From: Euprymna scolopes
Lineage: Eukaryota
Length of the DNA stretch: 64,000 nt
Assembly (NCBI GenBank): GCA_053919585.1
Contig: CM132789.1
Strand: one strand, 5' to 3'
Both the position numbers and the translations under genes were made by a program. Positions 4,308 through 42,376 of the stretch are shown piece by piece. The notes below the pieces were generated by a model. It was given only the letters and a program-made list of their open reading frames with translations. It was not told where the DNA came from and did no database searches. How positions within the stretch are numbered: the first letter of the stretch is position 1; each line of letters opens with the position of its first letter.

Positions 4308-4320
4308 CAAATAAACATAC

Positions 4321-18655: not shown

Positions 18656-21600
18656 CTTACGGCTCGTCTGGTCCGAAAACTGAGTCCAAGATTTTGGTCG
18701 ATTTGTCATGTCTGCTTTTGAAGAAAGTTGCCTGAGAAACACTTCACTTTTGGCAGGTGTTTCTGCTGGCAACGGCATCACTTCTCCAAGAATCTGTTTC
18801 TCTTCAGTTCCATCAGTATCTGGTTTCATTGTACTTATCTCATTTGGCTGCTTGTCAGTAGATTTATCTCCTGATAATTCAATATAGTTTACAAGTTTTG
18901 ACTTGCTCGTTGGTAAATCCTTATTGGAAAGGTTTTCGATGTTACTTATGCCTTCAGAAGAACTCAATGTTTCTTTAGGAACAGCAACGTCTTCTGTTGA
19001 ATCACTTTCACGTGGCAACTTTCCTATAGTAGAAACTGGATCTTTTCCCAGAATGATATCACCTTTATTGTGAGTTGTTGTTTCAGCATCTCCAATTGGA
19101 TTTATGTGAATTGGTTTTGGATTTTTAATTGGTGGATTTACTGGATTATCTATCGGTGTTTTGTTTGGTGTCTTAGGAGAAGGCTGCTGGAATTTAGGAC
19201 TTGCACCATTTTTATTCAAGTCAATTACACTTTTCTGGGGTTCTGGTAACTGTGTGATAGGTTTAGTAAGTATATGATTTTCGGAATCCGAATCAGAACC
19301 AGTAGAATTAACATTAGTCAAAGAACTAGCCCTAGGTTTTTTGTCATTCAAATTCTTAGGATCATTTGGTAACTGATTACCATCTGCTAAATCTGAGTTA
19401 CTGGCATCCTTTAATCCCTCCCTTGCACTATTACTGACTATCAGCCCAGCAGCTATAGCTTCTCTATAGTTCAATCGCTTCCTTTCTCCTGGTGTGATAT
19501 AAGTTCCTTTATGAGGATCTATAATTCCACGAGAGATCGCTTCGTGCAAACAAATAATTGAATCTTGATTCAAGTCTCGAATTTCAGCAACACTTGCCGA
19601 GACTAAGCCATGTTCAATAACAGCAGCCAGGTCATCATTCTTTCCAGATGATGGATCAATGAACAAACCTGTCCTAACATTATAAAGACCTTGATCGACG
19701 GCACTGTATAAAGTAAGACCACTTGGACTAATGATAAAACCTTGCAGCAGAGCCTCGGCCAGTGTCATACATTCTCCGGTTTGGGGATTTCGAAACTCAC
19801 CAGTCTTTATATCAATTAATCCTAAACTTGCAGCTCTCCTCAATGTAATTGGCTGAACAGTGTCAGGATCTATAACCTGAGAATTAGAACGGCTCAACAT
19901 TCCAGATGCAAATGCCTCTTCCAACCTAATGTGTCCTTTGGCCGGGTCGTTCAAAGCAGAAAATTGTACAGCATTGTTCACTTGTTCCACAGGGCATGAT
20001 GTTGAATCCTGATCTTCAGTGCCATTGCTGAGTAGGAGGGTTTTGGATTTATCACCTTCTTTAACAAGCCACCCTTCTTTTTTGGCCTCGTATAAATTCA
20101 TGATAGCATTCGACACGGGATGTTTGAATGTCCCTTTCTCTAATGATAACAATCCAATTGAACTTGCCACAAGAATATTCATGCATTCTTGAGTTTGAGG
20201 ACAGACAATCTGATCAACCAAAGGGTTTAAAAGACCCATCTTAAGAGCATTCAATATCGTCATGGATTTATCTTGGTTTGGATCTTTCAAGTGACCCGTC
20301 GTTGGATCATAAAAGCCCTTCTCAAGGAAATCATTTAAAGTAATGTCTGGTTTGGAATGCTTCAAAGACAAAGGTAGCATCAGTTCAGAGAGTTCAGAAT
20401 TGTGTAATATAAGGGGACTCCGAAGGGATTCCTGCTGTGGTTTTGGGTTGCTAGCAGGATTTGAACGAGTGCTCGTAATTGATATATCTTGTACGACTAT
20501 TTTTGATCTCTCAGTTACAAGTACCTCTTCAGTATCTGGACAGTTTTTAATCAGCGACAAACTGCGTTTTTCGGTCCCTACAGTTGCACTTGGCTGTAAG
20601 ACAATGGATGTTGCTGTGTTTAAGCTCCCTTCAGAAACCAATTCCTGCAAATTATTGATGGAATCCATAGAAGCTGCTTGAGGAATCTCAAAAAGGATTC
20701 TTTTAGCCACAGCCTCTGTTAATGATAAATTTGACGTAGCAGTTCTAACAGTTCCAATGTTTAGATCAAAAACATGGGTTTCTACAGCTTCAGATAGAAA
20801 GAGATTTTGAGACTCGTCAATGGTTAATAATGTGCAATCGATTCTGATAAAACCAGAGTCTATACTTTCTTTTAACGATTGCCTCTCCCCAGTTGTTGTA
20901 TTAAGCATCTTATGAGATTCTTCATCAAACAGGCACTTACTAACAGCATCAGCAAGTTGTAATTGTTTTTCACTGATGTTCAAAATAAGGCCAGATTTCA
21001 TAGCTTTTTCCAAAGGGATTGTACTTTTCTTCTGCCGATTTAGCACAGAAACCGTTTTACTACTGACAATGCCTTTCTGCAGGGCTTCATTCAATGTGAT
21101 AACCAATCCAGTTTCTGGATGTTTCACTAGCGACTTGTTGCCATCAATCAAATTACTGGATAAAGAATCAATTAAATTCCTATAATTCTGGGTTCTTGGA
21201 TCCAAAAACATCCGACGCTGATGATCAAATATGCCATATTCACAAGCAGATTTAAGTCCAAATTTTGGAGACTTGGAATCAACAAGCAAACAGGTGTCCA
21301 ACGATTCTCGATAAGGGATGTAGCTACCTCCTGGTAAAGCGAGCGTATAATTATCAGGATTCAGGATTCTTTTGCGAATTGCAGCTTTACAAGGAATATA
21401 CGATTTAAGATGAGCATCCCAAACTAGAGGTTCCCTGAGACGATCTTGTATGCATTCCTCATCAGATTGGTTTAAAGAAAAGTCCTGCTTTTCTGATCTG
21501 TATAAATTGTTTGAGGGAAGAATCAACTGGGATTTTAGACTTTCTGTTATAGAAAGTTTTCCAAGTTGAGAGGAGAATTTCCCACTTGAATCTAGAACGT

Positions 21601-24600
21601 CTTTTTCGATTGCTTGCTTAAGAGTAAGAGGGTGAGAATGGCCATGAAATGAGAGCGGTTCATCCTTTATCAACATGGAATTGACGGCATCTGTAAGAGA
21701 CATACTTCCTCCTGTATATGGACTATAAACAGTATTTGAATGATCATCGTAGAGTCCGAGTTGCACCGCTTCAATAATAGACATGCCACTTGCAGAAATA
21801 TCCGTCATTAGATTCCTATTCAGAATGGAAGCAAGGTCAATATTGTCTCCGTCTGAATTATTAAGAGTTCCATTCATAGCAATAAACCAACCTTCATCAA
21901 TTGCTTGCTCTAAAGAGACATAAGGTGCATCCTGTGAACGCTTAACCAAAGTAATTTTTGGATCAATTATTCCAATGTCAATAGCGTCTTGGATGGTCAG
22001 TTGTTTGCCTGTTAGCGGATCTATGACATATTTGAATGTAGGATCAAAGAGACCTGCCTGAATGGACGTCATCAGGCTGACTGAACACTGATCAGTGGCA
22101 AGTCTTATGTAACCTTTATCGACTGCGGTTTTCAAATCGACAACTTCCTTCTCGGTATGAACTTGAGAAAGTTCAATGTCTAAAACTCCTTTGGTGACAG
22201 CCTCATCAAATGTTAGAAATTCTCCTTTATGAGGAATCTTAGTTAGGTTTGGCTTTAACATACCACTCAATACAGCATCCCGCAAACATTGGATATTACC
22301 AGTTTGTGGATCGATGAACTGGCAAGTCTTTGCATTATAGATTCCTTGTTTGACAGCTTCAATAAGACTTATTTCTGAAGCACCTTTATCCTGAAGTACC
22401 AAACCTTTCCTCACAGCTTCTTCCAATGGGTAGGTCTTACAACCGACATTGTAAGAGCCATCATCTGCATTCAAGATATTTTGATAAATGGCACCATCAA
22501 CAGTAAGAAGAGTTTGGCTATCAGGATCTCGTACAGTGATAGTGTCTTTATCTAAGAGTCCAGATTCCAAAGCGCAGGTGAATGAGCCAGAAAGTGATGA
22601 AGAAGGATCAAGGAATGTTCTAGAGCTAGGATCATAGATTCCTTCTTCAAATGATTCTTGGAGGGTTAGCCCCGGCTGAGAGGATATATCAATTATTAAA
22701 CCTTTCTGCAAAGCATTTACAAATGAAATCTCTTCATTTTCAGAAAAATAATTAGCTGTCTGAACATTAAATATTTCTCGACTGACTGCGCTCTCAATAG
22801 TTAAAATCTGACCCAAATCATCTCGGATCCGGATGAGATCGGTGTCGAGGAGTCCAATGTTAACAGCATCCGAGAAGGTCATTTCTTCATTATTGTCTGG
22901 ATTCAAGAACAGGTTATTAGACTCATCATAAAGTTCTTCATCAAAGATTTCTGTAAGAGACAGTTTCAAAGGAGCACGACATCTTGTAATCAAACCCTTT
23001 TCTAATGCGAAATTCAAAGCGATTGCTTGTCCAGATGAATTCATCATTTTACCAGAGTCAATGTCAATTATCCTTTTCGATATGGCTTCACTCAATGCCA
23101 TCAGGTCCCAGCTGACAGGATCTCGAACCAAAGATTCCATATGAATTATGCCTTCTTGCAAAGCTTTAGGTAATGGCATAGTCGATTTATTAACTGGATG
23201 GGTGACTGTATTATTCACAGAGTCGTACAACCCCTGCAAAATGGCCTCATCAAGGGTGATAGGTATATCATTGTTCTCTATACATGTTTGGTTAAATAAG
23301 GAAGCGATGCTTTCGCGTCTAGTTCCAGTCATTGATGCTTTTCTTTTAGTGGTCAGACTCGGCAGTGAAGATCTTCGTGTCAGAACATTCAAGGAAGGAA
23401 TCAAACCAAACTCTTGTCGATCAGAAGAAAAGGAAGCGCTTTCTAAGGTTGAATCAGAATCAGTGTCTTGTACAGAATCCAACGAATACATTTGCTTGCA
23501 TGATTTTAAAGCAGACGAGAAAGAACCTCTTTCGACTAAGTCTTTTGCTTCTGTGGAGATTTTATGAGATAAAAGAAATCCAACATCCACAGCTTCAGGA
23601 ATTGACATTTTTTTGTTGTTTTGAAGATCCAAAAAGTGGCAAGAATCAGAAGTGCAGTGAAGAATCTCTTTGGAAATGGCTTCACCAAGCTCAATAATAT
23701 CAGATGTTTGTGTATTAATCACTTCCTGAGAAGTTGGGCTTAAATATCGAAAAGCAACCATCTGAGTGAGAGACAACAATTCTCCGGTAGATGGCTCTTT
23801 AAATAGGCTAACTTCATCATTATAATTTCCATCATAGACAAGATCGGCAATGGTTGTTTCTTTTCCAGTTATTATAAAACCTTTTTTAACAGACTCAGCC
23901 CAAGAAAGCCACTCGTTATTTGAAGAATCTCTTATTTCGCCAGTTTTCGCATTGAAAAGTCTTTTTTGCGTAGCAGCAATGGCTAAGTTCACATACTGCT
24001 TATTTTGGACATCCAGCAATCGTGTCTGAGCACTTACCGCCCCTTTTGTTATGAGATCAAATAAACCGTGCCCTAATTTATCCTGAAAATCAAAGACATC
24101 AGATTCTTCCCTTGGATTGCACTGAATGAGGCCAACCTCAAATGCAGAGAGCAAAGAATAAGAGATTTTGCTGTTAGGAATTAAAATGTTTCCATTCTTA
24201 GGGTCAACGTAACCCATGTCAAAAGCTTTCTCCAAGTTCATAGAAGAACCAGACTGCAGCAATAACTGCAAGCCATTTGCTGGGAGGATATCAAAGTTCA
24301 GACTATCTCTCAAATTAAGTAAACTTCCTTTTACTGGATGAACAAACTGATGACTGACAGGATCCCAGAATCCTTCCAAAAGATGCTTCAAGTAAGATTC
24401 TAACATACAAACATGATCCAAAGTGCCATTTATTTTTGGACTGTCATTGTCAGATGGTTTGCAGGTTAGTAGAACAGAGTCCTCAGGATGTGGGTTCCAA
24501 GGTTTCAAAGTTGGGCTGGAATTATGAAAGCCATTAGGAATTGAAGGGTCATGGATGAATGTTGCTGCTGCTGCTACTTCTTGTCTCACAGAAACTACAT

Positions 24601-24646
24601 TTTCAGGAGACTGTTTGCCCTTCAGATTAGCAGAGACATTTTTAGC
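18656..24646 (-). CDS. MACF1: Spectraplakin giant exon 2: plectin repeat domains, 1,997 codons
   Basis: Covers the 1999-aa ORF. Acceptor gaatttcag|GCT AAA AAT at 24646, in frame 19 codons upstream of the ORF-track start. Donor CGT AAG|gtaggc at 18656. 5,991 nt, phase 0/0, many plectin repeats plus a Pro/Ser-rich tail. Confidence 0.92.
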
Positions 24647-26128
24647 CTGAAATTCAGAATCTAGATCTCAGAAAATATTGACAGAAAAGAAACTAGCCTA
24701 CTGAATCAATGACAAAAAATACATGAAAAGTGAGGAAAAAATAAAATAAAAAAAGTTGTACTTTTATATCATCAAGAACATGGAAATGTTTATTTGAATA
24801 AAATTACATATTTCATACTACAGGATTTTCAGGCTAAATTTTTATGTAAAAGTATTTTTTAAACAAATATCAAAATCACAATGGACAAAAATCTATTCAT
24901 AAACATGAGTATTTTTTAATGAATAATCATTGATTTTTCTTCATAAAATCCATTATCATCTAATAATAATAATTGTGAAAGAGATGAAAGTTGAAACAAC
25001 ATGTAAGCAGAATAAATAAAAGCAAACAGACAGACACAGACACTCAACAGAAAAAAAAAAAACATTACAGATACAAAACATGAAATGAGAAGTGCAAAAT
25101 GTTATATATAAAAAAAAGATTAATTTTAACGCGACTCCATTTGGGTGACACAAAATATAAATTCTTTTCTAAAAATATGATTAAGCTACTTTAGAAAATA
25201 TTACCTAAAATCTTCACAAAAATAATTATTATAAAAATCAACAACTTTGATCATATATAAAACTTAATAGAGAAATTCAGCAGAACCCACTTACTCGTAT
25301 AGTATTTCAAATAAATGTTTATGTGTTAAATGATTTATTATGCAAAAGTAGATAAGCTTAAATATAAAGAGGAAAGTGTTTTCATCTCAAAGTATGGAAA
25401 TATAAAAGGAAAATGCTGGGATCGTTTTTTTTCCTAATGTGTGGCGTCTAAAATTATGTGACAAGAGGATGATCAACCATTGGTTAATCAAATCAAGAGA
25501 TCATTAACACAAATAGCATGACTCACAAGACAAAATAACATGGATTTTGTGAAATAACTATTTCTACAAAGTACAAGCAGTGGGAAAGTAGATTCCACTG
25601 GTGCTGATGACCAACTAAAAATCGTTTTTCTGATTTGGAATATGGATATGTGCAAACATTTAATAGACATTTAAATTAAGTTGAATTTTAAAGATTTATT
25701 TATTCAAAGACTAAACTATTGGAATAAGAAATGTATATTGTGTAGTGATGCATGGGAAGGGATGGCTTATATGACAGAAATTAGGAATTATAATTTATTG
25801 TTTATAAAGATCTACATCAAGTAAATTAATCTAATATTTCTGTTTTAATATTTAGTTCTTGCTATTAAGCCTTAAAGAAATGAAAATACAGAATATATTC
25901 TTTTTAGATATAATAGGCTCTGTCCATCTGTCATCAGTTACACTTAAGCTTGAAACAGTAGATTAAATGCACTCAAGTATACCAGTTATTATATTAATAA
26001 ATTTGTAAATAACCAAATCCAATTTTGTATTAGAGAGAACTGGAGACCCCCCCCCTTAAAAAAAAACAAAACAAAAAAAACAATGAATATTTTCAAAATT
26101 ATAAGAGGTTGCTATAATCTGCTTGAAG

Positions 26129-26133
<5 letters not shown>

Positions 26134-26194
<61 letters not shown>
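26134..26194. repeat. (TA)n microsatellite
   Basis: Direct read. Confidence 0.95.
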
Positions 26195-26198
<4 letters not shown>

Positions 26199-26712
26199 TT
26201 GTTTGCCATACTTTTTGAATAACTTCAATTATTTATACGAAAGTGCAGTTTTATCTAAATGCGAGTTGGAATAATTTTCCCTTTGACTAATTTGGTACCC
26301 CCAAATGGGGAGCGCATAAGTATTGTTTTTAAAATATAATAAATGTGTGTGTGCATAGATAATTTATTTAATGTGGAAAGCTATAAGATAAAAGCAGGAC
26401 TGAAAACAAGATTAGACAAAGGTAAAAGTGAAAATAATTTTTTTTTTTTTCATGTTTAAAAACATGAGAAAAAATTATTAAAATGGTTAATAAATAAGTT
26501 AACTCATCCTTCAAAGAACTTATTTTCATTTTTACCTTCGTCTTGTCTAGTTTTCATTCCTGCTTCTAACATATTTTTCACATTGTAAACAGCCTTCTAT
26601 GAATTATGTATGTATTTCAAAGCTATAAATTAGTCTCATAATTTCATATAAGATTCATTTATAAAATTCTTGACAAAAACAACCATTTTTCTAAATTGAA
26701 ACAAACACTTAC

Positions 26713-26751
26713 ATCTGATACCAACAACAGCTGAACATAAGCTGGTGATTT
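26713..26751 (-). CDS. Candidate 39-nt cassette exon (KSPAYVQLLLVSD)
   Basis: gagcttttagaacag|AAA...GAT|gtaagt; phase 0/0; an internal in-frame CAG would give an 18-nt version. Confidence 0.4.
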
Positions 26752-27989
26752 CTGTTCTAAAAGCTCAGACACATGAACATGGCTTAGGGGATTAAGCAGT
26801 GCAACAATTTTGGCAAAAAATGTCTATGAATGGCATAAATTATTAAATACAGGTAAAGGTTTTATTATTAGGTCTGGAAAGATGTGTTTGTTTTGAATGG
26901 AATAATTCACTCATACAAATGCAAAAAACAAGAGGAAAAATTCACAATTAGGGACTGGAATAAGGATGTTCAGAAGGAGTAAGATCTTCTGTAAGCAAAC
27001 AAGCTGCTAGGATGATGGTGGTCACTAACCCTTTTATCAAGGGAGGTAAGTCAGTCAAAAGAATTTGCTGGAAGTTGTAAATTAGGTCATCACTACTGAG
27101 CTTTGATAGGTAACAGTGAATTGTTATTAAGAGAAATTAGGGATAAAATATCAATAAAATATCAATATTGACAGAGATAATGATAGCTACATGTGCTGCA
27201 TCAGAGATGCATAAAAATCTAAAATAGCACGTCAACTTGAAAAAAAAAAAAAAAAAAAATTATACATTGCGATGTACATGGAAAACTCATCAGGGGATGT
27301 GGATTTTCTTGTCACTTTTTTAAATTTATGGTATTTATGCAATTTAACGACCATGTTATCATCGGAATCATCTGAGCGGTTTATGGAAAATGCAGGAAGT
27401 TACTGAAATTCTAAGCAACTTAACCTGAACATGAAAAAAATCATAAGGACGTTTGCTTGCTATAATTGGTTTATTAAAAAAAAAAAAAGAAAAGAAAAAG
27501 AAAATCTAAATATTTACCTTGATTTGAAAAAAAAAAAAAAAAAAAAAAAATGATTTTTGTTTGCTATGAGTTAATATTCAAAAAAATATTAATTCATGAA
27601 ACTTGTTTTACAATGAATGATTTTTTTTTTTAATTTGAATTTTGATTTCCTAAAAGTTTCATAAAAATTGTCCAATTCAAGAATACTGGTTTCATTTTTC
27701 AATTAATTTTTCATTAAATTAGCTAATGTTTGCATGAAAAAAAATCATGAAACTTTTGTTTGGCGCCTTCTGATATTTTATGTAAAGTGCCTGGACAATA
27801 GCATAAGTACCTAATTTACTTTTCTCTGCCTCCTCCCCTCACACTGTTTCAAGCATATTCTAAGGACAGTCGCCACAACCTACTCTATTTTCATGAAACA
27901 CTTTCTGCCACATTTCTTGGTTGTACATACAGCTGGTTGTGAACAAAGATTCTCACCTCATTTCTCAAGAACAGCTTATTTTTTTGTAC

Positions 27990-28760
27990 AAGGGAATCAC
28001 CAATTATCAAGACCCAAAAGCAACCTGAGGATAATGGCTAATGAGACAACACCATAATGATCAGTAGTGGTGGAAATTAAGTAAAATTTGATTTAAAAGG
28101 ATGACTTAAGAACTTGATTACATTGGACTTGAAAACTACCATGCTGTAGTCAACTGGGAAGCATCCCTACAGTATCGAGTTCTATAGGCAGACAATTCTA
28201 GGAAAGAAACTTTGTTCATGGAATTTTCGTTTAATTTTAGGCATAGATAGAGAGTAGGGGAAATTGTTGACAGTGGTTGTAGCTAGATGAGTGTTTGTTG
28301 TGAATGCTTTAGAAAGGACAGAGGACCATAGATTGAAGCTCAGTCGAGCATCTGTCTAGCACAATGTCTCTTCTGTGAGAAAGAGATTGTAAGGAGGAGA
28401 AAAAGAACGTTGCCTACTAGATTTCAAAGCTGGTTTTGAACTTTATTAAGTTATAAGTTATTATTAGGGCTGTGACAACAGCATATTCTTTTCATTGTTT
28501 TGACTCTTGAGTATATATTCGTTAATATCTTATGTTCTTATATAGACGGATGTGGTTCTCAGTTGATTAAGTGTGTCTGTGTCTGATATATATACCAAAG
28601 AATCAAAAGAATGAAAAGAATATCCTGTTGTCGCAGCCCTAGTTATTATAATGGTTTTGAACTCTATTAAGGCATGAAACAGCGTTCCGAGGGGTAATCA
28701 TTCTTTGGAATCTAAATTCTTGAATGTTGGTTACATGTTGCCTTCTGGGAGAGAAGGATA
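27990..28760 (-). mobile_element. Decayed CR1/L2-group LINE 3' end (interrupted by hAT MITE)
   Basis: Minus strand reads 'SFFPRIVCL.NS...GCFPVDYSMVVFKSNVIKFL'. Confidence 0.65.
28465..28641. mobile_element. hAT-family MITE with perfect 8-bp TSD
   Basis: TIRs tagggctgtgacaacagcatattcttttcatt and aatgaaaagaatatcctgttgtcgcagcccta; gttattat at 28457-28464 and 28642-28649. Confidence 0.88.
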
Positions 28761-30636: not shown

Positions 30637-30684
30637 CGGTACATCTGAGGAATTAATGTGAATGTATATCGATGCAGGTTTGGT
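30637..30684 (-). CDS. Candidate 48-nt cassette exon (TKPASIYIHINSSDVP)
   Basis: ccctgtgctgcggctgaacag|ACC...CCG|gtgagc; phase 0/0; lies in a non-repetitive, GC-richer island. Confidence 0.4.
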
Positions 30685-31318
30685 CTGTTCAGCCGCAGCA
30701 CAGGGCGGTATTTAAGCATTGTAACTACTGATTAATTATATTGTTTTTAACTCATTAAATTCCATCAATGTCAAAAAGAAAAAAAGTAGTTGATAATTTA
30801 ATAATTTTCAAACATGGTTGTCAGCGATTTAATTTAATAATTATCAAACATGGCTGCCAGCAATTTTATTTTTATTTTTTTTTTACTTAATGTTAAAATG
30901 TAGACTTTTAAAAGTAATTCAGGATTTTATTTATAAACTAAAAATACAATTTAAGCCTAACAAAATTTTTTCGCGAAGCCCTGCATGAAAAAAAAAAAAA
31001 AATAAATAAATAAAAAAATAAAAATAGACAGTCGTTTCAACTGTCCCTATTCTGCAATTGAAACATTGTAAAAATGGTTTTCTTGCAAATTACGAAAGTT
31101 TATAATAATTTGACAGCCACCGTTTCAGAGGATGAGAGCATCAAAATAAAGTGTTTTTATTTTAAAGCTCACATAAATCTAGTCAAAAGCATACAGTGAA
31201 TGGCAGCATGTCTTGTAAAGACTTTATGAACAAAATGGTGTCAAGTAGAAGATGATAAAATCAATGCAATAGGAATAAGGGAAAAGAGGGGGAATAAAAA
31301 AACATCAAAGTTACTTAC

Positions 31319-34300
31319 GGAATCTAAAGCATCAACCTCCAAAGCAGGTGGGGTCTGTCCTCCGATTACCTGAAGAGAACTGCTTCCTTCGACAGCCTCT
31401 GAAGAAACAAGTCCTGCAGCAATGGCATCCTTTAGTGGCATCACATCACCAGTCAGTTTGTTAACAACTTTACCAGCAGAGTCAATATAGAAACCTGGAC
31501 TAGTCACGTAGGTAGAGCTTGTAGCTAACGTCTGGATTTCTGTAGCACTCTTTGAGAGTAATTCGCCATTGACATAGTGCGAGCTCTCCTCTGGGCTGAA
31601 TGGAGAGCCTTCTGTGACAGTGACGTATTGATCTTGCGGTGCCACTTTTTTCTCCTTCAAACGTTTGTCTTTTTTGCTATCAACTTTGGCTTCCACGTAA
31701 CCGAGCTTTAATGCCTTTTCTAATGGCATGGTCACGTGACTGGCCGGATCAGTGTAAACCCAAGTGTTGCTATCAAGGTCTCCTTTTCGTAAAGCTTCTG
31801 ACAATGATATCGGTACAGCTTTATTAGAAGGTAATTCTTCATCTTTTGTTCGTCGGTCATCATGACTGGGTACTAAGAAACCGCACTGGAAGGCTTCATC
31901 AAGAGAAAGAGATTCATTTGTCACGGGGTGAGTAAAGGTGCCAGTTTTGGGATCAACGAGACCACATTTTGAAGCATCTTCAAAGGACATCAGTTCACTA
32001 GTGGTTGTGGGGTCACCGAGTAAACCACTTTTCACGGCTTCTTCGATACTTATATCCATCCCTTTTTCAGTATCCACATATCGTTTGCATTTCGGATCAA
32101 GAAGACCTTCATCCATAGCTTGTTTAAATGTTTTCCCCACAGCCAACTTAGTATCGGCTGGTAATTGAGAACCTTTCAATATCACAACAGATTCCTTCTT
32201 GGATTTCTTAGATCTGCCCAATTTCGGGGAGAGATATTTCTTATTGATTGCTTCTTGGATTCCGTAAGCTGTCTTTTTCTTTGGCTCAAAGAACATTCCA
32301 GTCTCCGGATCAATTAACCCAGAAGTAATAGATTCCTGGAAAGAAAGTGTTCGAGGAGATGGAGGACCTTCGAGAAACTTGAATGGCTCACCGTTTTCAT
32401 CGGAGAGAATCCCTAATAAGACAGCTTCGTCAATGGAATAGAAATTGGTAGAAGCTGGATCGGTGAACACACCAGTTTTACAATCAATCAACCGTTTAGT
32501 AAGAGCATTCTTAAAAGTCATTACGGGTTTGGCAGATTTGATATTTTCACTATCAACAATTTCTGCTTCGACAAGGCCTTTCTGAATGGCTTCTGTAATT
32601 GACAATGTTGTCTTACTCTTGATATCGACATAATTTCCAGCAGGGTCTAAGATTCCTTTCTCAAAAGCATCAGCCATGCTTATCATTTGGTTTGCTTCGG
32701 GATCAACAGCACCTGTAACATTATAAGTAACTCCTGGTTTCTGGGAGGAGACCGTTGTCTTCGTTGTGACAACTGACTGCACAGAGCCGGATATAAAGCC
32801 TTCTTTCATTGCATCTTCAAGGTTGTATACTTTGTTTGATGCTACGTCGGTGTAAGTCTTCTTTTCATTGTTGATAATGTTCTGCGCAATCGCTTCTTCG
32901 AGGGTCAGTTCTTTGCCCGTGAACGTATCTAAAACAGTTGAAACATTCACATGTCGAGATGTTCCTTTTTGAATATCACATTTTTTACCTTTCTTTGCTT
33001 CAAAGACCAGGTTCTTTTTGATGGCGTCGGCCAAAGATATAGTTTTTCCAGTAAGAGTATCTGTGAATAGTTTCTTCTCAGTATCTAAAATTCCAGCTTT
33101 AATTGCTTCTTCGACAGATAATATCTGGCCAGTCTTTGCATCAGTCACAGCGCTTAGAGAGGAAGCAGATTTTGCAAGAGAAAGTTCAGTGGGTGAGGTC
33201 GAAGCAACTTTAACCAGACCCTTTGTAACAGCTTCCTCGAGTCGTAGATGTTCACCTGTAGAGAGGTTAATCACCTCGCCTTTTCGTGGATCAAATATTC
33301 CAGCCTTAACGGCTTTATCTAAAGAGAACGTCTTTCCTGTCCGTCCATCGACGACCTCACTTACGCAGATCGTTTCTTGTTTCTGCACGCTGACAAGAGA
33401 GTCAGCAGCAGGCTTGATTGTTTTAACCAGATCTTTCTCAATTGCTTTCGAAATTGAAAACGTCTCATCCGTTTGTTTGTTGAAGTATTGACTCAGATTC
33501 TTGTCCACAATACCTTGTTCAATTGCCTCGGTAACGGTTAAGTCTTGACCAGTCTGAGTATTGACCACAAATTTAATCGGCAATAATTCAGAACCGTCAG
33601 CCTCAAGTGGAGTAGAAACTTTCTCACTCTGGCACAAACCTTTCTTTGCAGCTTCAGAAATGGACATTTTTTCGCCATCCTTATTTGTGTATGTGCCAGT
33701 CTGTAGGTCGACGATGCCTTTTTTCATAGCCTCTTCAATTGGAATAAATTGGCCCGATGCAGAGTCGAAAATGTTTTGAACTTGAAAAGTTTTCTCTGAA
33801 CCAGATGATGCAAGATCATCTTTAGGACAAGAATCGGTCTCTGAAATAAATTCTGATCCTTTTACCATTCCTTTTTTGAAAGCTTCTGTTAATGGTATCT
33901 GCTCTCCTGTCTTCCTGTTTCGAATAACTCCTTCCGAAAGATCAACCAGACCTCCTTCCACAGCATCACTTATTGGCATGACAGTGTGGGTCTGTGGATC
34001 GGTCACATGGCTAATACTGATAGAATGCCTCTTTGTAACGGTCACTTCATCTGTGGCACCACTGGGCTTGGTCTTACGAGGTTTCACACCTCCTTCTTCG
34101 GCAGAAATGTATCCTTTGCTAAGAGCTTCATCTAAACTCAAAGTTTCACCAGTTTTTTGGTTGATGAAAGTTTCCTGTTTTATGTTAAGGATTTCCTTTT
34201 GAACTGCCTCAGAAAGTGGCATTTTTTCTCCGCTCATCGGATCAGTAACAGATGAAATACAAATATCTTTCTGTTCAGAAAAGGAAATGGCTGCCTTGTA

Positions 34301-37300
34301 GCCTTCTCTTGTCTTTTCTTCTCGAGATACAAGACTGTCAACCATGCTCCCATGAATAAAATCACTACTCAGGGCTTGAGATAAGCTAAATGTTTGACCG
34401 GTGATGGGATTGGTATAAATTCCCTTCTCCACATTAACAATGCCTTTCTTTATAGCCGTTTTTAGATCAATAAACTGACCAGTGGAAGGATCCAAAACTT
34501 CATCAATCGATAACTTATCAGTTACCTTGATTGTGATCTTGCTTGATGAGTGGCTATCCACTGTAGACTCTTCAATATCTCCAGATTTTATCAAATCACC
34601 CAAAGTTGTTTTATTTTTTGATATAGGATCAATCAGTTGACCTTGATCATTGAGCAAGTCTCTATCCAATGCTTCTTGTAATGAATAGGATTCGCCATCA
34701 ATGGTCACCTGACCAGATGTAGGATATATAAAACCGGAGTCAATTGCTTCTTTAAGGGTAATTGAATTCCCAGAGCTTGGAATTTTGTACATACCAGTTT
34801 TAGGATTTAGGAAGCCACTGGAAATCGCTTCCATCAGGGTCATGGCTTCCTCATTGATGGGTGCAATTTGTTTGACTTTTACAACTTCAATGACATTTGG
34901 TAACACCATAGATGATTTGGTGACTTCAATAGCAACTGGTGCCGAACCTGGAGGAGGAGATGTAATCGAAGTATCTGGTTTCATCAAAGACTTTCGGGCT
35001 TTATTTACAAGAAGGCCTCCAGCAATAAGCGGTGCACCTGCAATGCCAGCCATTGCGATTAGTCCCATTTTGGCAGCATCTTTTAAACTGTGTTTCTGGT
35101 CGCCATCAATAAATTTCCCACTGGTTTTGTCAATCTTTCCTTTATCCAAACCATCTTGCAAGGTCAACATCTTCTGACTTTTGAGGTCATAAATTGCAGC
35201 TTGACCATTAATGAATCCGCGGTCAACAGCCTCCTCAAGGCTCATTTGTTGACCTGACATTGGTTCAGTGAACTTGTTGGTACTTTGGTCAAATAAGCCG
35301 GCATCAATGGCTGTAGTGAGACTCAAACTTTTCTTGGCACTTGGCTCAGGAGTTATTTCGAATTCTGTGCTTGGATCAATGAGTTGTTCTCTAATTGCAT
35401 CCAAGATCTCCATACGTGATCCAGTTTTAGGATCCGTGTATTGGTTTGCTGCCAAATCAATAAATCCTTGATCAAGAGCCTCAGCAAATGAGAGTCGCTT
35501 TGAAAGTTCTTGGGGTTCTTTCTTCTTACCTTCTCTATTTACAACCGGGATAGTCTCCTCGGGACCCATTTGTTGACCTGACATTGGTTTAGAGAACTTG
35601 TTCGTTTTCTGATCAAACGTACCAGCATCATTGGTTGTAGTGGGAGACAAAATCTTTTCACTTGGTTCAGGAGTTATTCCAGATTCCGTGCTTGGATCAA
35701 GAAGTTGTTCTCTAATAGCATCCAAGATTGCCATACGTGATCCAGTTTTGGGATCTGTGTATTGGTTTGCTGCCAAATCAAGGAATCCTTGATCGAGAGC
35801 TTCAGCAAATGAGAGTCTCTTGGAAAGTTCTTGGGGCTCACTTCCAGTGTTTTCTCTTTTATCTAATGGAGAGGAATCACCATTTTGGATTTTAGATGCA
35901 GTCACCTCCAATACCTTACTTCCTATTCCTGGTTTTTTAGGTACAACAGGTTTCTTCAAAGAGATAGTCTCTTTATTGAATTCTGCCGTATCAATTTTGG
36001 TCTCTTCTGTAACAATGACCGTCTTTCTGTCTGGTTTAGCAGGAGTTGGTGTTTCTTGAACAATATAACCCTGCCGAGGACGTTCAAATGAACTTGGTTC
36101 AAATTCTTCTCCTGCGCAATCAATTAATCCAAATTGGATGGCAGCAGCAAGCGACATTACATCCTTTGTTAATGGATCAGTAAATGTACCACTTTGTTTA
36201 TTAACTAATCCTTGATCAATTGCTTCTTTTAAAGAAAGACATTTTGTTGCTTCACTCGAAGGTTGCTTCGCACCATTAGACAGAGCAGATGAAATTGGCA
36301 GTCGACCAGAATCAATGTTGTCAGGCACAGCATCTGTTTCAGCTGTATCACCAGGGATCAAACCTTCAAGCAATGCCTCATTCAAAGGTATCCGTTCCTT
36401 GGTCAAAGTGTGAATAAGCTCCCCACTTTGGGGATCAACAACCCTTTCAGAAATAGCTTGATTAACAGTGAGTGAATTTCCACTTTTTGGGTCAATTATA
36501 ACAGAATTGTTCCCGTCAATTGTTCCACTACGGATTGCCTCTTTAATTGACATTGCATTTCCAGTTTTGGGGTCAAGAATTTTGCCTGTTTCAGCCACAA
36601 AATGACCCGCATGTATAGCATCATTTAATGTCATTGCTGGTTCTGATTGCGGCACTCCAGCTTCCCATGTTTGTTTTGTTTCAATATGAGTGACCGTTTC
36701 AGTTTTGGATACACTTTGATAAACTTCTGAAATAATGGTACCACTTGGACGTTTCTCCTCATCACGGGCAGCTCCTATGATATCTGACGGCAAACATTCC
36801 CCAGTAACTGTAGCAATAGTTTGAGCTGTTGATGTACTGATAAGGCCTTCATGTAAAGCTTGTTTGATACTCACAGACTCACCTGTTTTGCTATGTGTCA
36901 ATTGACCTTTTTCGGAATCGAAGGTCACATCATCTGATTTAGTTGAATGAGCAATGACCTGCTCTGCTAGATCTTCTACCATGTCTGTATTCAACAATCC
37001 TTTCTGGACAGCTTCAGTGACGGGCATCTGTACACCCGTTTGATTGTCCATTACCAAACCTTTCTCCCAATCGATAACTACACGACTGCCATCTTTCAGA
37101 CTTGCTTCGGAAGCCACATTAGAACTAACTTCTTCCCCTGCCAATTTGCCATTCTCTGTAGATGGAGCTGATTGATATGAAAACGGTTTACCCAATACTG
37201 ATTCTTGTGCACTTGAAACACCAGAATCAGACGATGGCGAATCACCAAATTTACTCTCAACAGATGGAGTTTTGATAAGGGATTGGTTTTCATTGGCAGC

Positions 37301-40300
37301 ACCTGGCAGACTTGGCTTGATTTTATCCTCTGGTTTTGCATAAACAATGGTTGTCGTCGGTTTTTCCGGTACTGTTGGACCTTTTGTTTCAGCTTTCTTG
37401 GTAGGCGTGGATGGCTTTGATGCTATTGTAGGGGTTGCTTGATTCTTCTCCTTTTGCAGAGATGGTTTTGGTGGCACTTCTGGTTTCTGTGGAGATTTCT
37501 TTTCATCCAGCTTCTTTTTCACTGCATCACAAACTGCCTTGCCCGCCAAAACTGGGCCAAGTATTGGAGCACCAACAACGGCAAGAAGTCCCATTTTCAC
37601 AGCTTCTTTAGCATTTAATTTCTGCCCACTTTTTGGATCAAGGATCTTCCCAGACTTTTGGTCAACGATCCCCCTTTCTATAGCCTCTGCTAATGGTACA
37701 TTTTCATTTTTTCTACTATCATAAACTTCCATGTGGGACCCAGAGTCCAGACCCTTTTTAATGACTGTGTCTACAGAAAGCACCTGTTGTGTTTTTGGAT
37801 CAAATATATTACTGGATCCCGGCTCGTACATGCTCTCAACAATGTGCCTGTCGATAGCAGACTTCAATGGAACTTTTTTCAGATTTTTTGTATCAGTTAC
37901 TTCTGCAGTTCGCTTATCAACTAATCCAAGTTTTAGTGCTTTTTCAAATGGAATTTTTTCATTGGTTGAAAGGTTTTCCACAGAAATAAAGTCAACGCTG
38001 ATGAAATTATTCTTTATGGCTTGCTCAAGTGTGAATTGTTGTCCTTTTTTGCTAAGGAAGAGACGTTTGTCGGCGTCAAAATATCCAAGAGCAACAGCAT
38101 CAAGAAGATTAATAGACTTTTGGTCCTCCTCTAGAGCCAAATCTTGCAGACGTGAGCGATCCGTTTCATTTTTAATCATTCCAGTGTTTGGATCAATTTT
38201 GTTGGTCTGGAAACATTCTTGCAGAGTATATTTGGCACCAGTTTTAGAATCGGTAATGGCTTCCTTCTCAATGTTAATAATTCCTTGGTCAATTGCTTCG
38301 GAAATAGTCATTGTTGTTCCCAAAGAAGGCACAGTGATCAATCCAGTATCTTGGTCGATAAGGCCTAACCGTGCTGCTTCTGCATATGAAATTCCAACAT
38401 TAAGAGGTTGGCCATCCTGTAATTCATCCAATTTAGAGAGACGTTCTCCCGAAGGAAGCAGAGAATCGTCAACATTTCTCTCAACGTCAAACTCAATATT
38501 TATGGATTCTGTAGCGAGAGATTGATTGCTAACACCCCCAGAAGCCGTGACACCAGATTTTTCTAGTTTCATATCGATGAGAGTTGGAGATTTTGGTGAA
38601 GTGGTACTCTTATCAAGAATTTCAGGTTGTGTAAGGGTAGTACTTTCTCTGTCTGCAGCTGTCGAAGAAGTAAGTTGGGAAATATCTGTAGTTTTAGACA
38701 TTTTGATGAAACCTTGTTTTAAAGCGTCTTTCAAATCCAAATGCTCTCGAGATCTAGAATCGAAGAATGTGTTTTGATCCACATCTACGATCCCTTCTTT
38801 CATGGCTTTTGATAGAGATATTTCTTTGCCAGTTCTCGGATCGACGACAGAAGTCACTTTACTCAGTGGAAATTCAGGTGATTCTGCCATGATACTACTT
38901 TTCAGAACGTCTTCCGTGTTTTGTTGTGAAGTCACCTCGCCGTGAATCAGGCCCTTTTCAAGAGCTGCTGTTATAGCCATAGTTTCACCTGTGGAAGGGT
39001 TTGTATAAAGACCCTTTTCAACACTGAGGACACCTTTTTCTACGGCACTATCGTAGGACACCATTTCCATAGTGACAGGATCAATAACGCTTGTAATGCT
39101 CAAGGTGACCGTTTTTGAAGCGACATCTTCCACTATGGTCGTCTCAAATGCCTCTTCATCTTCAGTGATATGGATGCTACTGATTTCGACTCTCTCTGTC
39201 TTTGGGAGCTCAGCAGTTTCTGTGAATATCAGCCCTTTGTGAATGGCATCATCTAATGATGAGATTTCACCTGTCATAGGGTTCGTGTAAGTTCCTTTAG
39301 CGGGGCTAAATATTCCTTCATTCATGGCTTCGTTGACAGACATCTTCTTTCCTGTTCTTGGATCGAGTACAGAAGACACTGCTACGGTTGTCTGCTTAGT
39401 AGTAATGATACGGTTGCCATCTTGTTCAATGGTTGGCACAATTGAAGAAAGTTCAGCATCAATAAGTTTCTTTTCAATTGCTTCCGTGATAAACATCTTT
39501 TCCATGGTCAAAGGGTTGACATAAAGCCCTCGACTTGCATCGATGATTCCCTCGTCGATGGCTTCAGCCACCGTCATTACCTCGCTTGTCACAGGGTGAA
39601 CAACACTGTTCAGGTTAAACGTTTTCGTTTCTCGTACCCAATCTGCTTTTATAGCTTGTGGTACGGAGCTCAAGTCTTCAGCTATAACAAGACCAATTTC
39701 AATAGCTTGACTAATCGGTATTCGCTTCTCCTTGCCATTTTCAAATCCAACATACTGGCCTTTGTCTTGATCTAAGACTCCTTGGTGAATAGCTTGGCTT
39801 ACACTCAACCGTTCCTTGGTGATTGGATCAAGGACTCCAGTGATTGAAAAGGCAACTGTCTCCTTGATCGGGCCTTCAGCCACTTGAGGTGGCTCACTTG
39901 TATATTCGGCTACGATGAAGCCCTTCTTCACAGCTTCATTTATTGGCAGCTTTGTGCCAGTCGTGAGGTCGGTGAAGTGACCAGAGGTTAAATCTAAAAT
40001 TCCATTCTCGATGGCTTCATCTACATCGATGGTTTTTTTAGTTCTTGGATCAACAACAGATTTTATGAACATGTTGCGAACTTCTGAAATAATGGCTTTA
40101 ACTGGTTTCGTCATTGCAATTTGGGTAAATGTATAGTTTTCAGCAGATTTACTGACAAAAGCTGATTCAATAATGGACTCCTGAGACCTGGCAGCATCTG
40201 GAGACGTTCGAGTGACAGGATCTTTCGCAGACTGATGAAAATCTGGTTTGGGAAGTGAATCGGTACTATCAAATCCTATTCCAGGAAATTGTCCTGGAAC

Positions 40301-42376
40301 ATTACTCGATGGCCATTGAGTGGATAAACAAAGTAATCCTCTATAAATAGCATCTTCAATCGTCATCATTTCCCCTGTATTCGGATCTTTGAATGTTCCG
40401 GCTTGTTCTGCTAGTAGACCCTTTGACACTGCCTCGGAGATGGTTATCGGTTTTGGCACAGCCTTTACAGGCTCAGACTCTACACAAGTTGTAACGGTCG
40501 TAGAAATGACTAGTGGACTAACTAAATCCAACAACATCTGTGCACTGTCTGGCGTCATAATCTGTTCTGCGACAGCACGCTGTACTGGCAACAGATTACC
40601 CGATTTATCTAATATGTTTCCAGATTCTATGTCTAAAATTCCTTCATTAATTGCTTCAACAACTGACAGCATTTTACCACTTGGATCTGCAATCATTTTC
40701 TGAGTTAGTCGATCAGCAATTCCTTCATCGATGAAACCATGCTTGGCTGCATCGATAATGGAGAGTTTCCTTCCTGTTTGAGAATCAACAAACTCACCCT
40801 GAGGTGTCAAAACACCGGATTGGAATGCTTCTGGGATGGACAAGAGAGAACCTGTATTGATGTCAAGTACAGTTTTAGGTGGGAAGGAAATATCTTCGCT
40901 GGCAATCTTGATATGACCTTCAGAGAGGGCATCATAGATTGAAAGCTTTTGTTGCGTGGCAGGCACGGTTATCTGCCCATTATAGTCCAGAATACCCCTT
41001 TGAAGGGCATCGTTAAATGAAAGGACATCATTAGTTTTGGTCATAATCAAACTTTTTGTATCGGCATTAAGAATTCCATTGTTGATGGCTGCGGCAAATG
41101 TGACTGTCTGGTTTGTGTTTGCATCGAATATTGAACCGTCTTCCCTGAGAGCACTTTTGTGCACGATATCCGACAAAGTCATAGGTTGAATGAGCAGCTG
41201 TCTGCGATGAGCCTCCGACAATGAAATCCACTTACTCGAATTCACATCCAGAAACTGTCCAGATTGTGGGTGAATAATACCCTTAGCGACTGCTTCTGTA
41301 AGGGAAATCAATGCAGCACCTTTTGTGGGGCGAATCTCTTTAAGAGAAGGATTAACGTAACCCTTCTCAACAGCCTCCAAGATCGTCATCTCCTGATCTG
41401 ATATAGGATCACATATTTTACACTTCAATTCATCATACATCCCCTTTTGCAGAATCTCTGCTAAGCCAAGCGCTTTATCAGCACCTGGGAAACTTTTAAG
41501 CCCAAACAAAGCTTGGGATTGAGTAATTTCGCTGACATTTACAGCTGGGCTTATGCCAAGCATGCTGGGTAATTTAGAGGAAATCAATCCTTGTTCATTG
41601 GCATCTTTGACTGGGATCATATTTCCAGTTAAAGGATCAACCACTTTGTTAGTGACTGGATCAAAAAGACCTTTCTGAATAGCTTCTGTTAGAGTGCATT
41701 CCTTGCCTGTGTTTGGATCAATAAGGCCACATGCCGTGTGTAATTGCTGCTGGATTTGGCCGCTGACGAAACCATGTTTGACAGCATCGGAAAGAGGTAT
41801 TTGGGCATGCGTCTTTGGATGGATGAACATGCAAGATTTCTTATCAAGTAACCCTGACTGGAATGCATCCAATGCCGTCATCTTTTGTTTTGTGATAGGA
41901 TTTAGAACAGCGGAGATTTCTAGCACGTTGCCCGGACTTGTTTCAACCTTTGACTTGACCACACTGATCACATTCTGTATTACTTTGCCTTTCGGCTTTG
42001 AAATATGTAAAGTAGTGTCAGAGGGCAGATTGCCATTCACAGAGGATACCTCTGGAGCTTCAGATATGTCGGATAAAGCTACACCTTTGGCATCTCTGCC
42101 GACTTTCTGGATAGATTTCACTGATGTTTTGGTTGTAGACGAGAAAGAGCTGACAGTGTCCAGGGAAGCTAACGGAGAGTGTTGGGAAATGGTAGACACA
42201 GATGAAGTTGATGTGGAACTCATGTAGCTGGCAGGGATGCTGCAAAGGCTATCAAATTCATTGAATTGCTGGAAAAACTCCTGCATATCTTCATCCACAA
42301 GCATGGATGAACGTTTTGCCAGTTCAGCACGGAATGTTCGAAGAAGAGGGATATTTTCGTCTATTACCATTTGAAA
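31319..42376 (-). CDS. MACF1: Spectraplakin giant exon 1: plectin (plakin) repeat domains, 3,686 codons
   Basis: Covers the 3709-aa ORF. Acceptor tttactttcag|TTT CAA ATG at 42376 and donor GAT TCC|gtaagt at 31319. 11,058 nt, phase 0/0. Dozens of 'DPxTGxx(M/L)S(L/I)xEAIxxG(L/I)(L/I)D' plectin repeats. Confidence 0.95.

What the first reader, a model, noticed from the sequence alone, without database searches (positions are those of the whole stretch)
18656..42376. Two separate giant, phase-0 plectin-repeat exons (11.1 kb and 6.0 kb) between the plakin domain and the spectrin rod
Seen: both exons begin and end on codon boundaries, as do the flanking exons (44727 donor, 7366 acceptor). Each can therefore be skipped or included independently, adding 0, ~2,000, ~3,700 or ~5,700 aa. 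Established: Drosophila shot, MACF1b and BPAG1b each insert plectin repeats at this position through one large alternative exon. Inference: two independent giant cassettes would give a tunable-length, combinatorial cytolinker, and the full isoform would exceed 6,000 aa within this window alone.
Basis: partly seen in the sequence, partly recalled or inferred. Interest (0 to 1): 0.75.

Follow-up and report, generated by a model that had tools for sequence, protein, structure and literature searches.

The report
Two ancient giant plakin-repeat exons
The two huge exons are real, expressed parts of a mollusc (apparently squid) spectraplakin gene, a giant protein that links cytoskeletal filaments; the two-exon layout is an old feature shared by other molluscs, and whether the exons are used independently is still unproven.

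Summary
Observation confirmed. On the minus strand, exon A (42376-31319, 3,686 codons) and exon B (24646-18656, 1,997 codons) lie between the last plakin-domain exon (44945-44727) and the first rod exon (7366-7220). All six splice sites are canonical and phase 0, and both exons carry plectin repeats.

The layout is not special to this genome. A second giant plectin ORF orthologous to B follows the A orthologue in four gastropod-clade loci, in two contigs of one bivalve-clade sequence, and probably in a nemertean. Exon B is under purifying selection (dN/dS 0.22).

RNA contigs contain both exons, but no splice junction was seen, so combinatorial use is unproven. Four hints suggest regulated use:
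- Intron flanks of B are 75-82% identical to a relative, against 50% at synonymous sites.
- One run holds A but almost none of B.
- RNA contigs stop at a conserved phase-0 donor at 18893, 237 nt before the predicted donor.
- A Candidula model joins A directly to the rod.

Against simple A-to-B splicing, one RNA contig runs unspliced through B's acceptor.

Verdict: a known gene kind (spectraplakin plakin-repeat insert) in an undescribed but conserved two-exon form. Moderate interest.

The parts
59235..59396 (-). Plakin-domain exon (approximate limits, from the protein match)
   Evidence: tblastn: Mytilus DST P0018 residues 1183-1236 and Candidula P0016 residues 1038-1098, 44-46% identity
57200..57283 (-). 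Plakin-domain exon (approximate limits)
   Evidence: tblastn: P0018 residues 1238-1265 (71%) and P0016 residues 1100-1128 (76%)
44727..44945 (-). Last plakin-domain exon, 73 codons, phase 0 at both ends
   Evidence: Acceptor ttcag|ATTTAT and donor ATGAAG|gtaaga. Matches P0018 residues 1264-1341, and the next residue of P0018 aligns to the start of exon A. Weak match to the end of the plectin plakin domain, 5j1i.
31319..42376 (-). Giant exon A: 11,058 nt, 3,686 codons, at least 68 plectin-type repeat cores. Positional counterpart of the shot plakin-repeat exon.
   Evidence: Orthologues of 3,300-3,800 aa in many molluscs begin with the same ..CAG|FQM(V/G)..PLLRTFR motif. RNA runs hold 0.74 of the words of 34951-44950, where the exonic share is 0.76.
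24647..24891 (-). Conserved intron flank upstream of exon B. Its first 67 nt are present in one RNA contig.
   Evidence: 75.4% identity to relative L010 over 240 nt, while the remaining 2.7 kb of L010's upstream sequence does not align. X1 record 8 runs through the acceptor to about 24713.
18656..24646 (-). Giant exon B, long form: 5,991 nt, 1,997 codons, at least 16 plectin-type repeat cores. Conserved blocks at aa 460-1020 and 1571-1754.
   Evidence: Orthologues: P0042 70%, P0043 49%. The core is 34-39% identical to the second giant ORF of L001-L004 and L007/8, against 21-24% to any A exon. dN/dS 0.215. RNA contigs cover it in X1, X12 and X14.
18656..18892 (-). Optional 79-codon tail of exon B, lying between a proximal donor (CTT|gtaaac, exon end 18893) and the distal donor (AAG|gtaggc, exon end 18656)
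   Evidence: No RNA contig of X1, X12 or X14 covers 18700-18876; the X1 contig ends at 18892 and the X12 contig at 18877. 24646..18893 is 5,754 nt = 1,918 codons. The donor and its phase are conserved in L010, and the segment is open in both species.
18581..18655 (-). Highly conserved start of the intron after exon B; contains TTGGAATGGA, GCTTCATGTTT and ACTAAC
   Evidence: Near-identical in the window, L010 and L009, although L009's exon B protein is only 49% identical. The downstream flank is 82.4% identical over 330 nt.
7220..7366 (-). First exon after the plakin-repeat region, 49 codons, phase 0 at both ends (start of the spectrin rod)
   Evidence: Acceptor ttttag|GGCCGT and donor CAAAAG|gtaata. 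tblastn to Candidula P0015 at about residues 3637-3690, directly after its A-like exon.
26..4470 (-). Further rod exons at about 4470-4318, 1824-1735, 1260-1162 and 175-26
   Evidence: tblastn to the part of Candidula P0015 after its A-like exon, 48-53% identity; the precomputed Pfam list for the whole protein includes PF00435 Spectrin.

Best explanation
The window holds the middle of a cephalopod spectraplakin gene (shot/MACF1/dystonin type) on the minus strand. Its plakin-repeat region, about 5,700 aa, lies between the plakin domain and the spectrin rod. It is encoded by two giant exons separated by a 6.7-kb intron.

Shown:
- Both exons are genuine, transcribed coding exons with phase-0 boundaries.
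- Exon A corresponds in position to the single 10.5-kb plakin-repeat exon of Drosophila shot.
- Exon B is a distinct orthologous unit. It is found directly after A in gastropod-clade and bivalve-clade genomes and probably in a nemertean, so the split predates the divergence of these mollusc lineages.

Inferred:
- As in shot, MACF1 and dystonin, the repeat region is an optional insert that lengthens the linker and adds repeat surfaces for junction or filament binding.
- B in particular is a regulated exon. It has two conserved phase-0 donors, giving 1,918 or 1,997 aa, and strongly conserved flanking intron sequence.
- A and B can therefore be present at different levels in different samples.

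Fully independent, four-way combinatorial use is possible but not demonstrated.
For: Structure and identity.

Conservation of A and its boundaries.

B orthologues next to A:
- L001-L004.
- L007/L008.
- Nemertean L006: ORF1 is collinear with A; ORF2 is weakly B-like and in collinear order.
- Clade assignment by tree.

Purifying selection on B: dN/dS 0.215, and 0.06-0.16 in the core.

Expression:
- RNA runs hold the exonic share of the words but not the intronic share.
- B is covered in 30/30, 29/30 and 21/30 bins in X1, X12 and X14, while adjacent intron is not covered.

Regulated use of B:
- Flanks are 75% and 82% identical against 50% identity at synonymous sites, and the distal intron is unalignable.
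- Contigs end at 18892 and 18877, beside a conserved phase-0 GT. Exon 7366 starts with G, which accounts for the contig end at 18892.
- X5 holds 0.71 of the words of the exon A stretch but only one 170-nt contig of B.
- The Candidula model P0015 joins its A-like exon directly to the homologue of exon 7366, and that locus has no B.

shot precedent: PMC2173965 and bioRxiv 10.1101/122010.
Against: - No exon-exon joint was recovered, so neither inclusion nor skipping junctions are shown.
- All RNA evidence comes from assembled contigs. These drop minor forms and carry no reliable depth.
- The X5 contrast could reflect coverage thresholds, and X5 is RNA only by a guess.
- The one contig that reaches B's 5' end (X1 record 8) passes the predicted acceptor without a branch, into sequence with in-frame stops. 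In that run the dominant form is therefore not A spliced to B at 24646.
- The proximal donor CTT|gtaaac is a weak consensus match (4 of 8), and the X12 contig runs 16 nt past it.
- One unnamed organism (P0063) has an A-like start and B-like blocks in a single 6,207-aa ORF, so separability is not universal.
Confidence: 0.6

Rival explanations
1. Plain two-exon insert. A and B are always spliced together, either as a constitutive region or as one optional block. The intron between them is just an old intron, and the conserved flanks serve ordinary splice-site recognition of very long exons.
For: - A followed directly by B is conserved across three mollusc clades and probably a nemertean.
- X1, X12 and X14 hold words of the exon A stretch and contigs on exon B.
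- P0063 carries A-like and B-like parts in a single ORF.
- The public Tubulanus annotation includes a 10,248-aa product that starts inside the first giant ORF and runs on through the next.
Against: - X5 has A but almost no B.
- Candidula keeps A but lacks B.
- The X1 contig is not spliced at 24646.
- Flank conservation is far above synonymous-site conservation and extends 240-330 nt, more than core splice signals need.
- There are two conserved donors at the end of B.
Confidence: 0.25
2. Exon B belongs at least partly to a separate transcript form. Either an internal start in the A-B intron or a retained 3' end of that intron precedes B. A-containing and B-containing RNAs would then be largely different molecules, for example an A-ending plakin-like form and a B-plus-rod form.
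For: - X1 record 8 (depth 12.5, similar to the other B contigs) runs without a branch from exon B through 24646 to about 24713.
- The 245 nt upstream of B are conserved in L010, whereas the rest of the intron is not.
- Internal alternative starts and plakin-repeat-terminated isoforms are known in dystonin and VAB-10 (and established knowledge).
Against: - An in-frame TGA lies at 24670-24668.
- The first three ATGs (24639, 24600, 24552) are out of frame, and the first in-frame Met is residue 81, which makes a poor translation start.
- This rests on a single contig in a single run.
- The contig end lies at a T-run, where assemblies often break.
- Phase-0 acceptors read ..FQ| in frame in the window, L001 and L004, which argues that B is normally entered by splicing.
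Confidence: 0.1
3. The giant frames are not functional exons but relics, a repeat expansion or an assembly artefact.
For: None beyond the unusual size. The last 177 codons of B have dN/dS 0.82.
Against: - Chance open frames are excluded.
- Pfam Plectin hits score 742 and 139 bits.
- Orthologues are kept open in many species.
- dN/dS is 0.215 overall.
- Both exons are present in RNA contigs from several studies, while introns are absent.
- Indels against L010 are multiples of three.
Confidence: 0.01

Closest known systems
Drosophila short stop (shot) plakin-repeat exon, Shot-PH isoforms (Roper and Brown 2003, PMC2173965)
   Same: One giant exon (10,497 nt, against 11,058 nt for exon A) lies between the plakin domain and the spectrin rod. 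It encodes dispersed plectin-type repeats that are not grouped into 4.5-repeat domains. It is optional by alternative splicing and gives isoforms up to 8,846 aa.
   Different: shot has one giant exon plus a small exon with 2 repeats (bioRxiv 10.1101/122010). Here a second giant exon of about 6 kb, with its own conserved blocks, follows the first. Orthology of A to the shot exon is positional only; sequence identity is about 25%, the level seen between any plectin arrays.
Mammalian MACF1b and dystonin BPAG1b internal plakin-repeat regions
   Same: A plakin-repeat region is spliced in between the plakin domain and the rod of a spectraplakin.
   Different: The mammalian inserts are shorter: about 20 repeats in MACF1, and 9-11 in each dystonin region. 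They are described as forming plakin repeat domains. The model of B aa 460-900 matches solved domains only locally.
C. elegans VAB-10A and dystonin BPAG1e (isoforms that end in plakin repeats)
   Same: Plectin repeats are used as an alternative module of a spectraplakin locus. This is the nearest precedent for the rival in which A-ending or B-starting transcripts exist.
   Different: In those cases the repeats are C-terminal through alternative 3' ends. Here both exons have phase-0 donors that lead on into the rod, and no terminal form was shown.
Spectraplakin loci of other lophotrochozoans: gastropod-clade contigs L001-L004, bivalve-clade L007/L008, Tubulanus polymorphus LOC141899052 with its neighbouring gene, Mytilus coruscus DST, Candidula unifasciata models
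   Same: The same A start motif, the same phase-0 boundaries, and a B orthologue 0.4-2 kb downstream of A.
   Different: - The intron between A and B is 6.7 kb here.
- Candidula lacks B.
- Public models are fragmentary. The Mytilus model ends inside A. The Tubulanus annotation splits one ORF between two genes.

Membership tests
Spectraplakin (shot / MACF1 / dystonin / VAB-10) | Plakin domain (spectrin-like repeats with SH3) upstream of the repeat region | tested here: met
   Exons at 59396-59235, 57283-57200 and 44945-44727 align to residues 1183-1341 of Mytilus DST P0018 and to Candidula P0016. Both proteins carry CH, SH3_10 and Spectrin_3/4 Pfam domains. The direct hit to the plectin plakin domain 5j1i is weak.
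Spectraplakin (shot / MACF1 / dystonin / VAB-10) | N-terminal calponin-homology actin-binding domain | not testable with these tools
   It would lie upstream of the window. It is present in the homologous proteins P0016, P0017 and P0018.
Spectraplakin (shot / MACF1 / dystonin / VAB-10) | Spectrin-repeat rod after the plakin-repeat region | tested here: met
   Exons at 7366-7220, 4470-4318, 1824-1735, 1260-1162 and 175-26 align to the part of Candidula P0015 after its A-like exon (37-53% identity). The precomputed Pfam list for the whole of P0015 includes PF00435 Spectrin. Pfam scans of the single small exons found nothing.
Spectraplakin (shot / MACF1 / dystonin / VAB-10) | C-terminal EF hands and GAS2-related microtubule-binding domain | not testable with these tools
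   It would lie downstream of the window.
Plectin/plakin repeat proteins (Pfam PF00681) | Multiple plectin repeats by sequence profile | tested here: met
   Exon A scores 741.8 bits and exon B 138.9 bits, against a cut-off of 20.5. A home-built core profile finds 68 repeats in A and 16 in B.
Plakin repeat domain (globular 4.5-repeat module that binds intermediate filaments) | Globular 4.5-repeat fold as in desmoplakin or envoplakin domains | tested here: inconclusive
   The AlphaFold model of B aa 460-900 has pLDDT 84.7 and regular hairpin-helix units. The top five Foldseek hits are all plakin repeat domains (5dzz, 1lm7, 1lm5, 4qmd), but with TM about 0.1. VIA-align finds no Z of 2 or more for the whole 441-residue model. 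The local motif is shared; the global packing is not shown.
Plakin repeat domain (globular 4.5-repeat module that binds intermediate filaments) | Binding to intermediate filaments | not testable with these tools
   This needs biochemistry.
Alternative cassette exon | Length a multiple of three, with matching phases at the flanking exons | tested here: met
   Lengths are 11,058, 5,991 (or 5,754), 219 and 147 nt, and all six or seven sites are phase 0. The phase is conserved in L001, L003, L004 and L010.
Alternative cassette exon | Both inclusion and skipping junctions observed in RNA | tested here: inconclusive
Only contigs were available.
Alternative cassette exon | Flanking intron sequence conserved above the neutral level | tested here: met
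   For exon B only. Flanks are 75.4% (240 nt) and 82.4% (330 nt) identical to L010, against 50% identity at synonymous sites, and the distal intron is unalignable. No relative's DNA was available for the flanks of exon A.

The most novel reading that the evidence does not exclude
The plakin-repeat region of lophotrochozoan spectraplakins is an ancient two-module system, predating the split of cephalopods, gastropods and bivalves. Its modules A and B would be switched separately: A-only, B-only, both or neither, plus short and long B tails and perhaps an internal start before B. This would give a graded set of cytolinker lengths, controlled by the deeply conserved intronic elements around exon B.
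Probability: 0.3. Interest if true: 0.55.

Novelty: new variant of a known kind. Interest (0 to 1): 0.4.

Why it matters
- Spectraplakins are studied almost only in flies, worms and mammals, where the internal plakin-repeat insert is the least understood part of the protein.
- A second, separately conserved giant exon with blocks up to 60% identical between cephalopod and gastropod shows that the insert has at least two parts under distinct constraint.
- Molluscs have cytoplasmic intermediate filaments, which arthropods lack (for arthropods; for molluscs this rests on my own knowledge). That makes them a better place to ask what these repeats bind.
- Public gene models of these loci are visibly broken, so exon maps such as this one help annotation.
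- The finding does not change the general picture of spectraplakin biology.

Tried and rejected
- Pfam scans of ten small flanking ORFs gave nothing useful.
- Sequence searches against solved structures were weak or empty.
- A word search with the last 250 aa of exon A, meant to catch junction-spanning protein fragments from RNA assemblies, found nothing.
- The exhaustive protein search with B aa 1-1200 found no annotated mollusc protein long enough to hold both A and B. The long hits were Drosophila shot (7,424 aa), Trichuris (7,296 aa) and unnamed ORFs.
- The Candidula locus has two large ORFs between its A-like exon and the rod. They are Ser/Asp-rich or tandem-repeat sequence without plectin motifs, so they are not a B orthologue.
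- An RNA-structure explanation for the conserved block at the 18656 donor failed. The fold is no more stable than shuffles (z = -0.23), and three sequences give no usable covariation.
- Donor 18661|gtaagg was rejected because it is phase 1 and out of frame with exon 7366.
- Genomic DNA contamination was rejected as the source of RNA coverage. The 2.35-kb intron 44726-42377 and the stretch 18700-18876 are not covered in runs that cover the exons.
- Paper searches for spectraplakin exon structure in molluscs found only a note that plectin repeats occur in mollusc spectraplakins (PMC9145010).
- DNA of the close relative's exon A contig and of two other contigs could not be fetched.
Full report
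**What is in the sequence**

The window has only two minus-strand ORFs of at least 250 aa: 31241..42370 and 18590..24589. Stop-to-stop, the frames run 42433-31244 and 24667-18593. With 6.8% stop codons in the adjacent intron, a chance frame of this size is excluded.

- Exon A: ag|TTTCAAATG at 42376 and GATTCC|gtaagt after 31319.
- Exon B: ag|GCTAAA at 24646 and CGTAAG|gtaggc after 18656.

The lengths are 11,058 and 5,991 nt, both multiples of three.

The upstream exon is 44945-44727 (73 codons) and the downstream exon is 7366-7220 (49 codons). Each is bounded by ag/gt in the frame that matches homologous proteins. All six sites are therefore phase 0. A competing donor at 18661 would be phase 1 and out of frame. 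Exonic G+C is 0.39-0.42 against 0.28-0.30 in the introns. The window has no N.

**What gene it is**

Both exons hit Pfam Plectin, at 742 bits (A) and 139 bits (B). A profile built from the window's own repeats finds at least 68 repeat cores in A and 16 in B, spread over their whole lengths.

tblastn with Mytilus DST (P0018) and Candidula P0016 places three exons of the end of the plakin domain at 59396-59235, 57283-57200 and 44945-44727. Both proteins carry CH, SH3_10 and spectrin-like Pfam domains. In both proteins the residue after the last of these exons aligns to the first residues of exon A.

The part of Candidula P0015 after its A-like exon places exons at 7366, 4470, 1824, 1260 and 175. 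The precomputed Pfam list for that whole protein includes Spectrin.

The locus is therefore the middle of a spectraplakin gene, and A plus B is its internal plakin-repeat region. In line with that, the tree of A orthologues puts the window, with a 75-83% identical relative, outside both the Mytilus (bivalve) clade and the Candidula (gastropod) clade.

**Is the two-exon layout unusual? No.**

Exon A has stand-alone ORF orthologues of 3,300-3,800 aa in many assemblies. All start with the same ..cag|FQM(V/G)..PLLRTFRAELAKRSS motif. Where the end aligns, they finish just before an in-frame 'VS', which is a gtaagt-type donor in phase 0.

I fetched the surroundings of five such ORFs:
- The four gastropod-clade loci L001-L004 each have a second giant plectin ORF (2,200 to over 3,100 aa) 0.5-2 kb downstream on the same strand.
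- The fifth ORF, from the bivalve clade, lies on two contigs (L007 and L008). Both show a 1,727-aa ORF 400 nt downstream.

These second ORFs are orthologues of exon B, not further copies of A:
- B's core (aa 460-1020) is 34-39% identical to them, against 21-24% to any A exon.
- B aa 1571-1754 reaches 60% identity with L001.
- B's end (..R(R)K|gta) and, where visible, its in-frame ..FQ| acceptor are conserved too.

In the nemertean Tubulanus, a 4,320-aa ORF collinear with A is followed after 390 nt by another plectin ORF. That ORF has weak, collinear similarity to B. The public annotation there cuts the first ORF between a 3,936-aa gene and a 10,248-aa neighbour.

One unnamed organism has an A-like start and B-like blocks in a single 6,207-aa ORF. 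Candidula has an A-like exon but no B between it and the rod.

The A|B split is thus old and widespread. My searches found no description of a second giant exon.

**Is exon B a working coding exon? Yes.**

Against the 70%-identical relative (L010), dS is 0.83 and dN/dS is 0.215. dN/dS falls to 0.06-0.16 in the conserved blocks and rises to 0.82 in the last 177 codons. Indels are multiples of three.

An AlphaFold model of aa 460-900 is confident (pLDDT 84.7) and shows a regular hairpin-plus-helix array. Its five best Foldseek hits are all solved plakin repeat domains, but only locally (TM about 0.1). VIA-align gives no Z of 2 or more. As Roper and Brown argued for Shot, the repeats may not pack into the globular 4.5-repeat domain.

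**RNA evidence**

Only assembled contigs were available. One run search and one read-laying of at most 6,000 letters were allowed.

RNA runs from several studies hold 0.70-0.74 of the sampled words of 34951-44950. The exonic share of that stretch is 0.76. Exon A is therefore expressed essentially in full and the 2.35-kb intron is not.

I laid four runs on 18700-24699:
- Exon B is covered in 30/30 bins in X1, 29/30 in X12 and 21/30 in X14. B is expressed.
- X5 holds 0.71 of the words of the exon A stretch but has a single 170-nt contig on B.
- No joints were reported.

First, no run covers 18700-18876. The X1 contig ends exactly at 18892 and the X12 contig at 18877. At 18893|18892 lies CTT|gtaaac. 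24646..18893 is 5,754 nt, or 1,918 codons, so this site is also phase 0. Exon 7366 begins with G, which would make spliced and unspliced paths diverge exactly after 18892. The site and its phase are conserved in L010. The 79-86 codons between it and the distal donor are open in both species, with chance P of about 0.004 each. I read this as a proximal alternative donor that dominates in these samples, with about 60% confidence. The site is a weak consensus match, and the X12 contig runs 16 nt past it.

Second, X1 record 8 runs from inside B through the predicted acceptor to about 24713 without a branch. The sequence there has an in-frame TGA, and the next three ATGs are out of frame. In that run the dominant RNA at B's 5' edge is therefore unspliced. 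It could be a retained intron end or an internal start. This remains unexplained, and the A-to-B junction is not verified.

**Conserved introns**

Between the window and L010, the 240 nt upstream of B are 75% identical and the 330 nt downstream are 82% identical. Synonymous sites in B are only 50% identical, and the remaining 2.7 kb of L010's upstream sequence does not align at all.

A block from about 18745 to 18581 spans the distal donor. It is nearly identical even in L009, whose exon B protein is only 49% identical, and it contains an ACTAAC motif. Flank conservation above the neutral level is a known hallmark of regulated exons (established knowledge from mammalian comparisons).

The block's predicted fold is no better than shuffled sequence.

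**Conclusion**

The thing is the plakin-repeat insert of a mollusc spectraplakin, in an ancient two-exon form. In-frame skipping of either exon is possible. Several indirect lines suggest that at least B is regulated: the conserved flanks, the two donors, the A-rich and B-poor run, and the evolutionary loss of B in Candidula. Independent combinatorial use is unproven, and the all-included chain is not excluded.

Noticed in passing
window 51914-52383: A 34-nt G-rich minisatellite of 13.7 copies at 96% match lies in a plakin-domain intron. It explains the 244-aa ORF at 52597-51866 and the G/C-skew spike in 52001-54000.
   Followed up: partly
window 35243-35836: A tandem duplication of a 321-nt (107-codon) unit, 1.8 copies at 85% match, lies inside exon A. 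It indicates recent repeat growth within the giant exon.
   Followed up: no
window 18581-18745: A block spanning the distal donor of exon B is almost invariant among three cephalopod-clade sequences, although the protein diverges to 49%. It holds TTGGAATGGA, GCTTCATGTTT and ACTAAC. In the window and L010 (but not L009) it also holds AATAAA, 70 nt into the intron just after the read-through stop. It could be a splicing-regulator site, or a stop plus poly(A) signal for a B-terminated form.
   Followed up: partly
window 24647-24713: An RNA contig of run X1 includes at least 67 nt of intron upstream of exon B. A second AG (24702-24701) and the in-frame TAG and TGA are conserved in L010.
   Followed up: partly
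L006 41571-54530 and 54916-59310 (Tubulanus polymorphus): The public annotation ends one gene (3,936 aa) at 49311 and starts the next (10,248 aa) at 49386. Both points lie inside one continuous 4,320-codon ORF, so this is probably a model split rather than two genes.
   Followed up: partly
L005 (Candidula unifasciata) 11031-11075, 23440-30825, 34617-39641: The annotated model bridges a frameshift in the A-like exon with a 43-nt 'intron'. The 30-kb intron after it holds two very long open frames of Ser/Asp-rich and tandem 'THEVDTGLVG' repeats on the gene strand.
   Followed up: partly
L003 20922-22661 and 22655-29263: The exon B orthologue is split into two overlapping ORFs in different frames. 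This is a frameshift, from assembly error or a real change.
   Followed up: no
P0063 (ENA, 6,207 aa): This single ORF starts with the exon A start motif (MPQLRTFRSEL) and carries B-like blocks in collinear order. It may be an organism with no intron between A and B.
   Followed up: partly
window 18700-24699: Contig differences from the window are shared among runs of different studies, for example 19155, 20979, 21002 and 24084. T>C on the + strand (A>G in the RNA) ties with G>A as the commonest class in X1 and is the commonest in X12. This could be ordinary polymorphism or cephalopod RNA editing, and contigs cannot separate the two.
   Followed up: no
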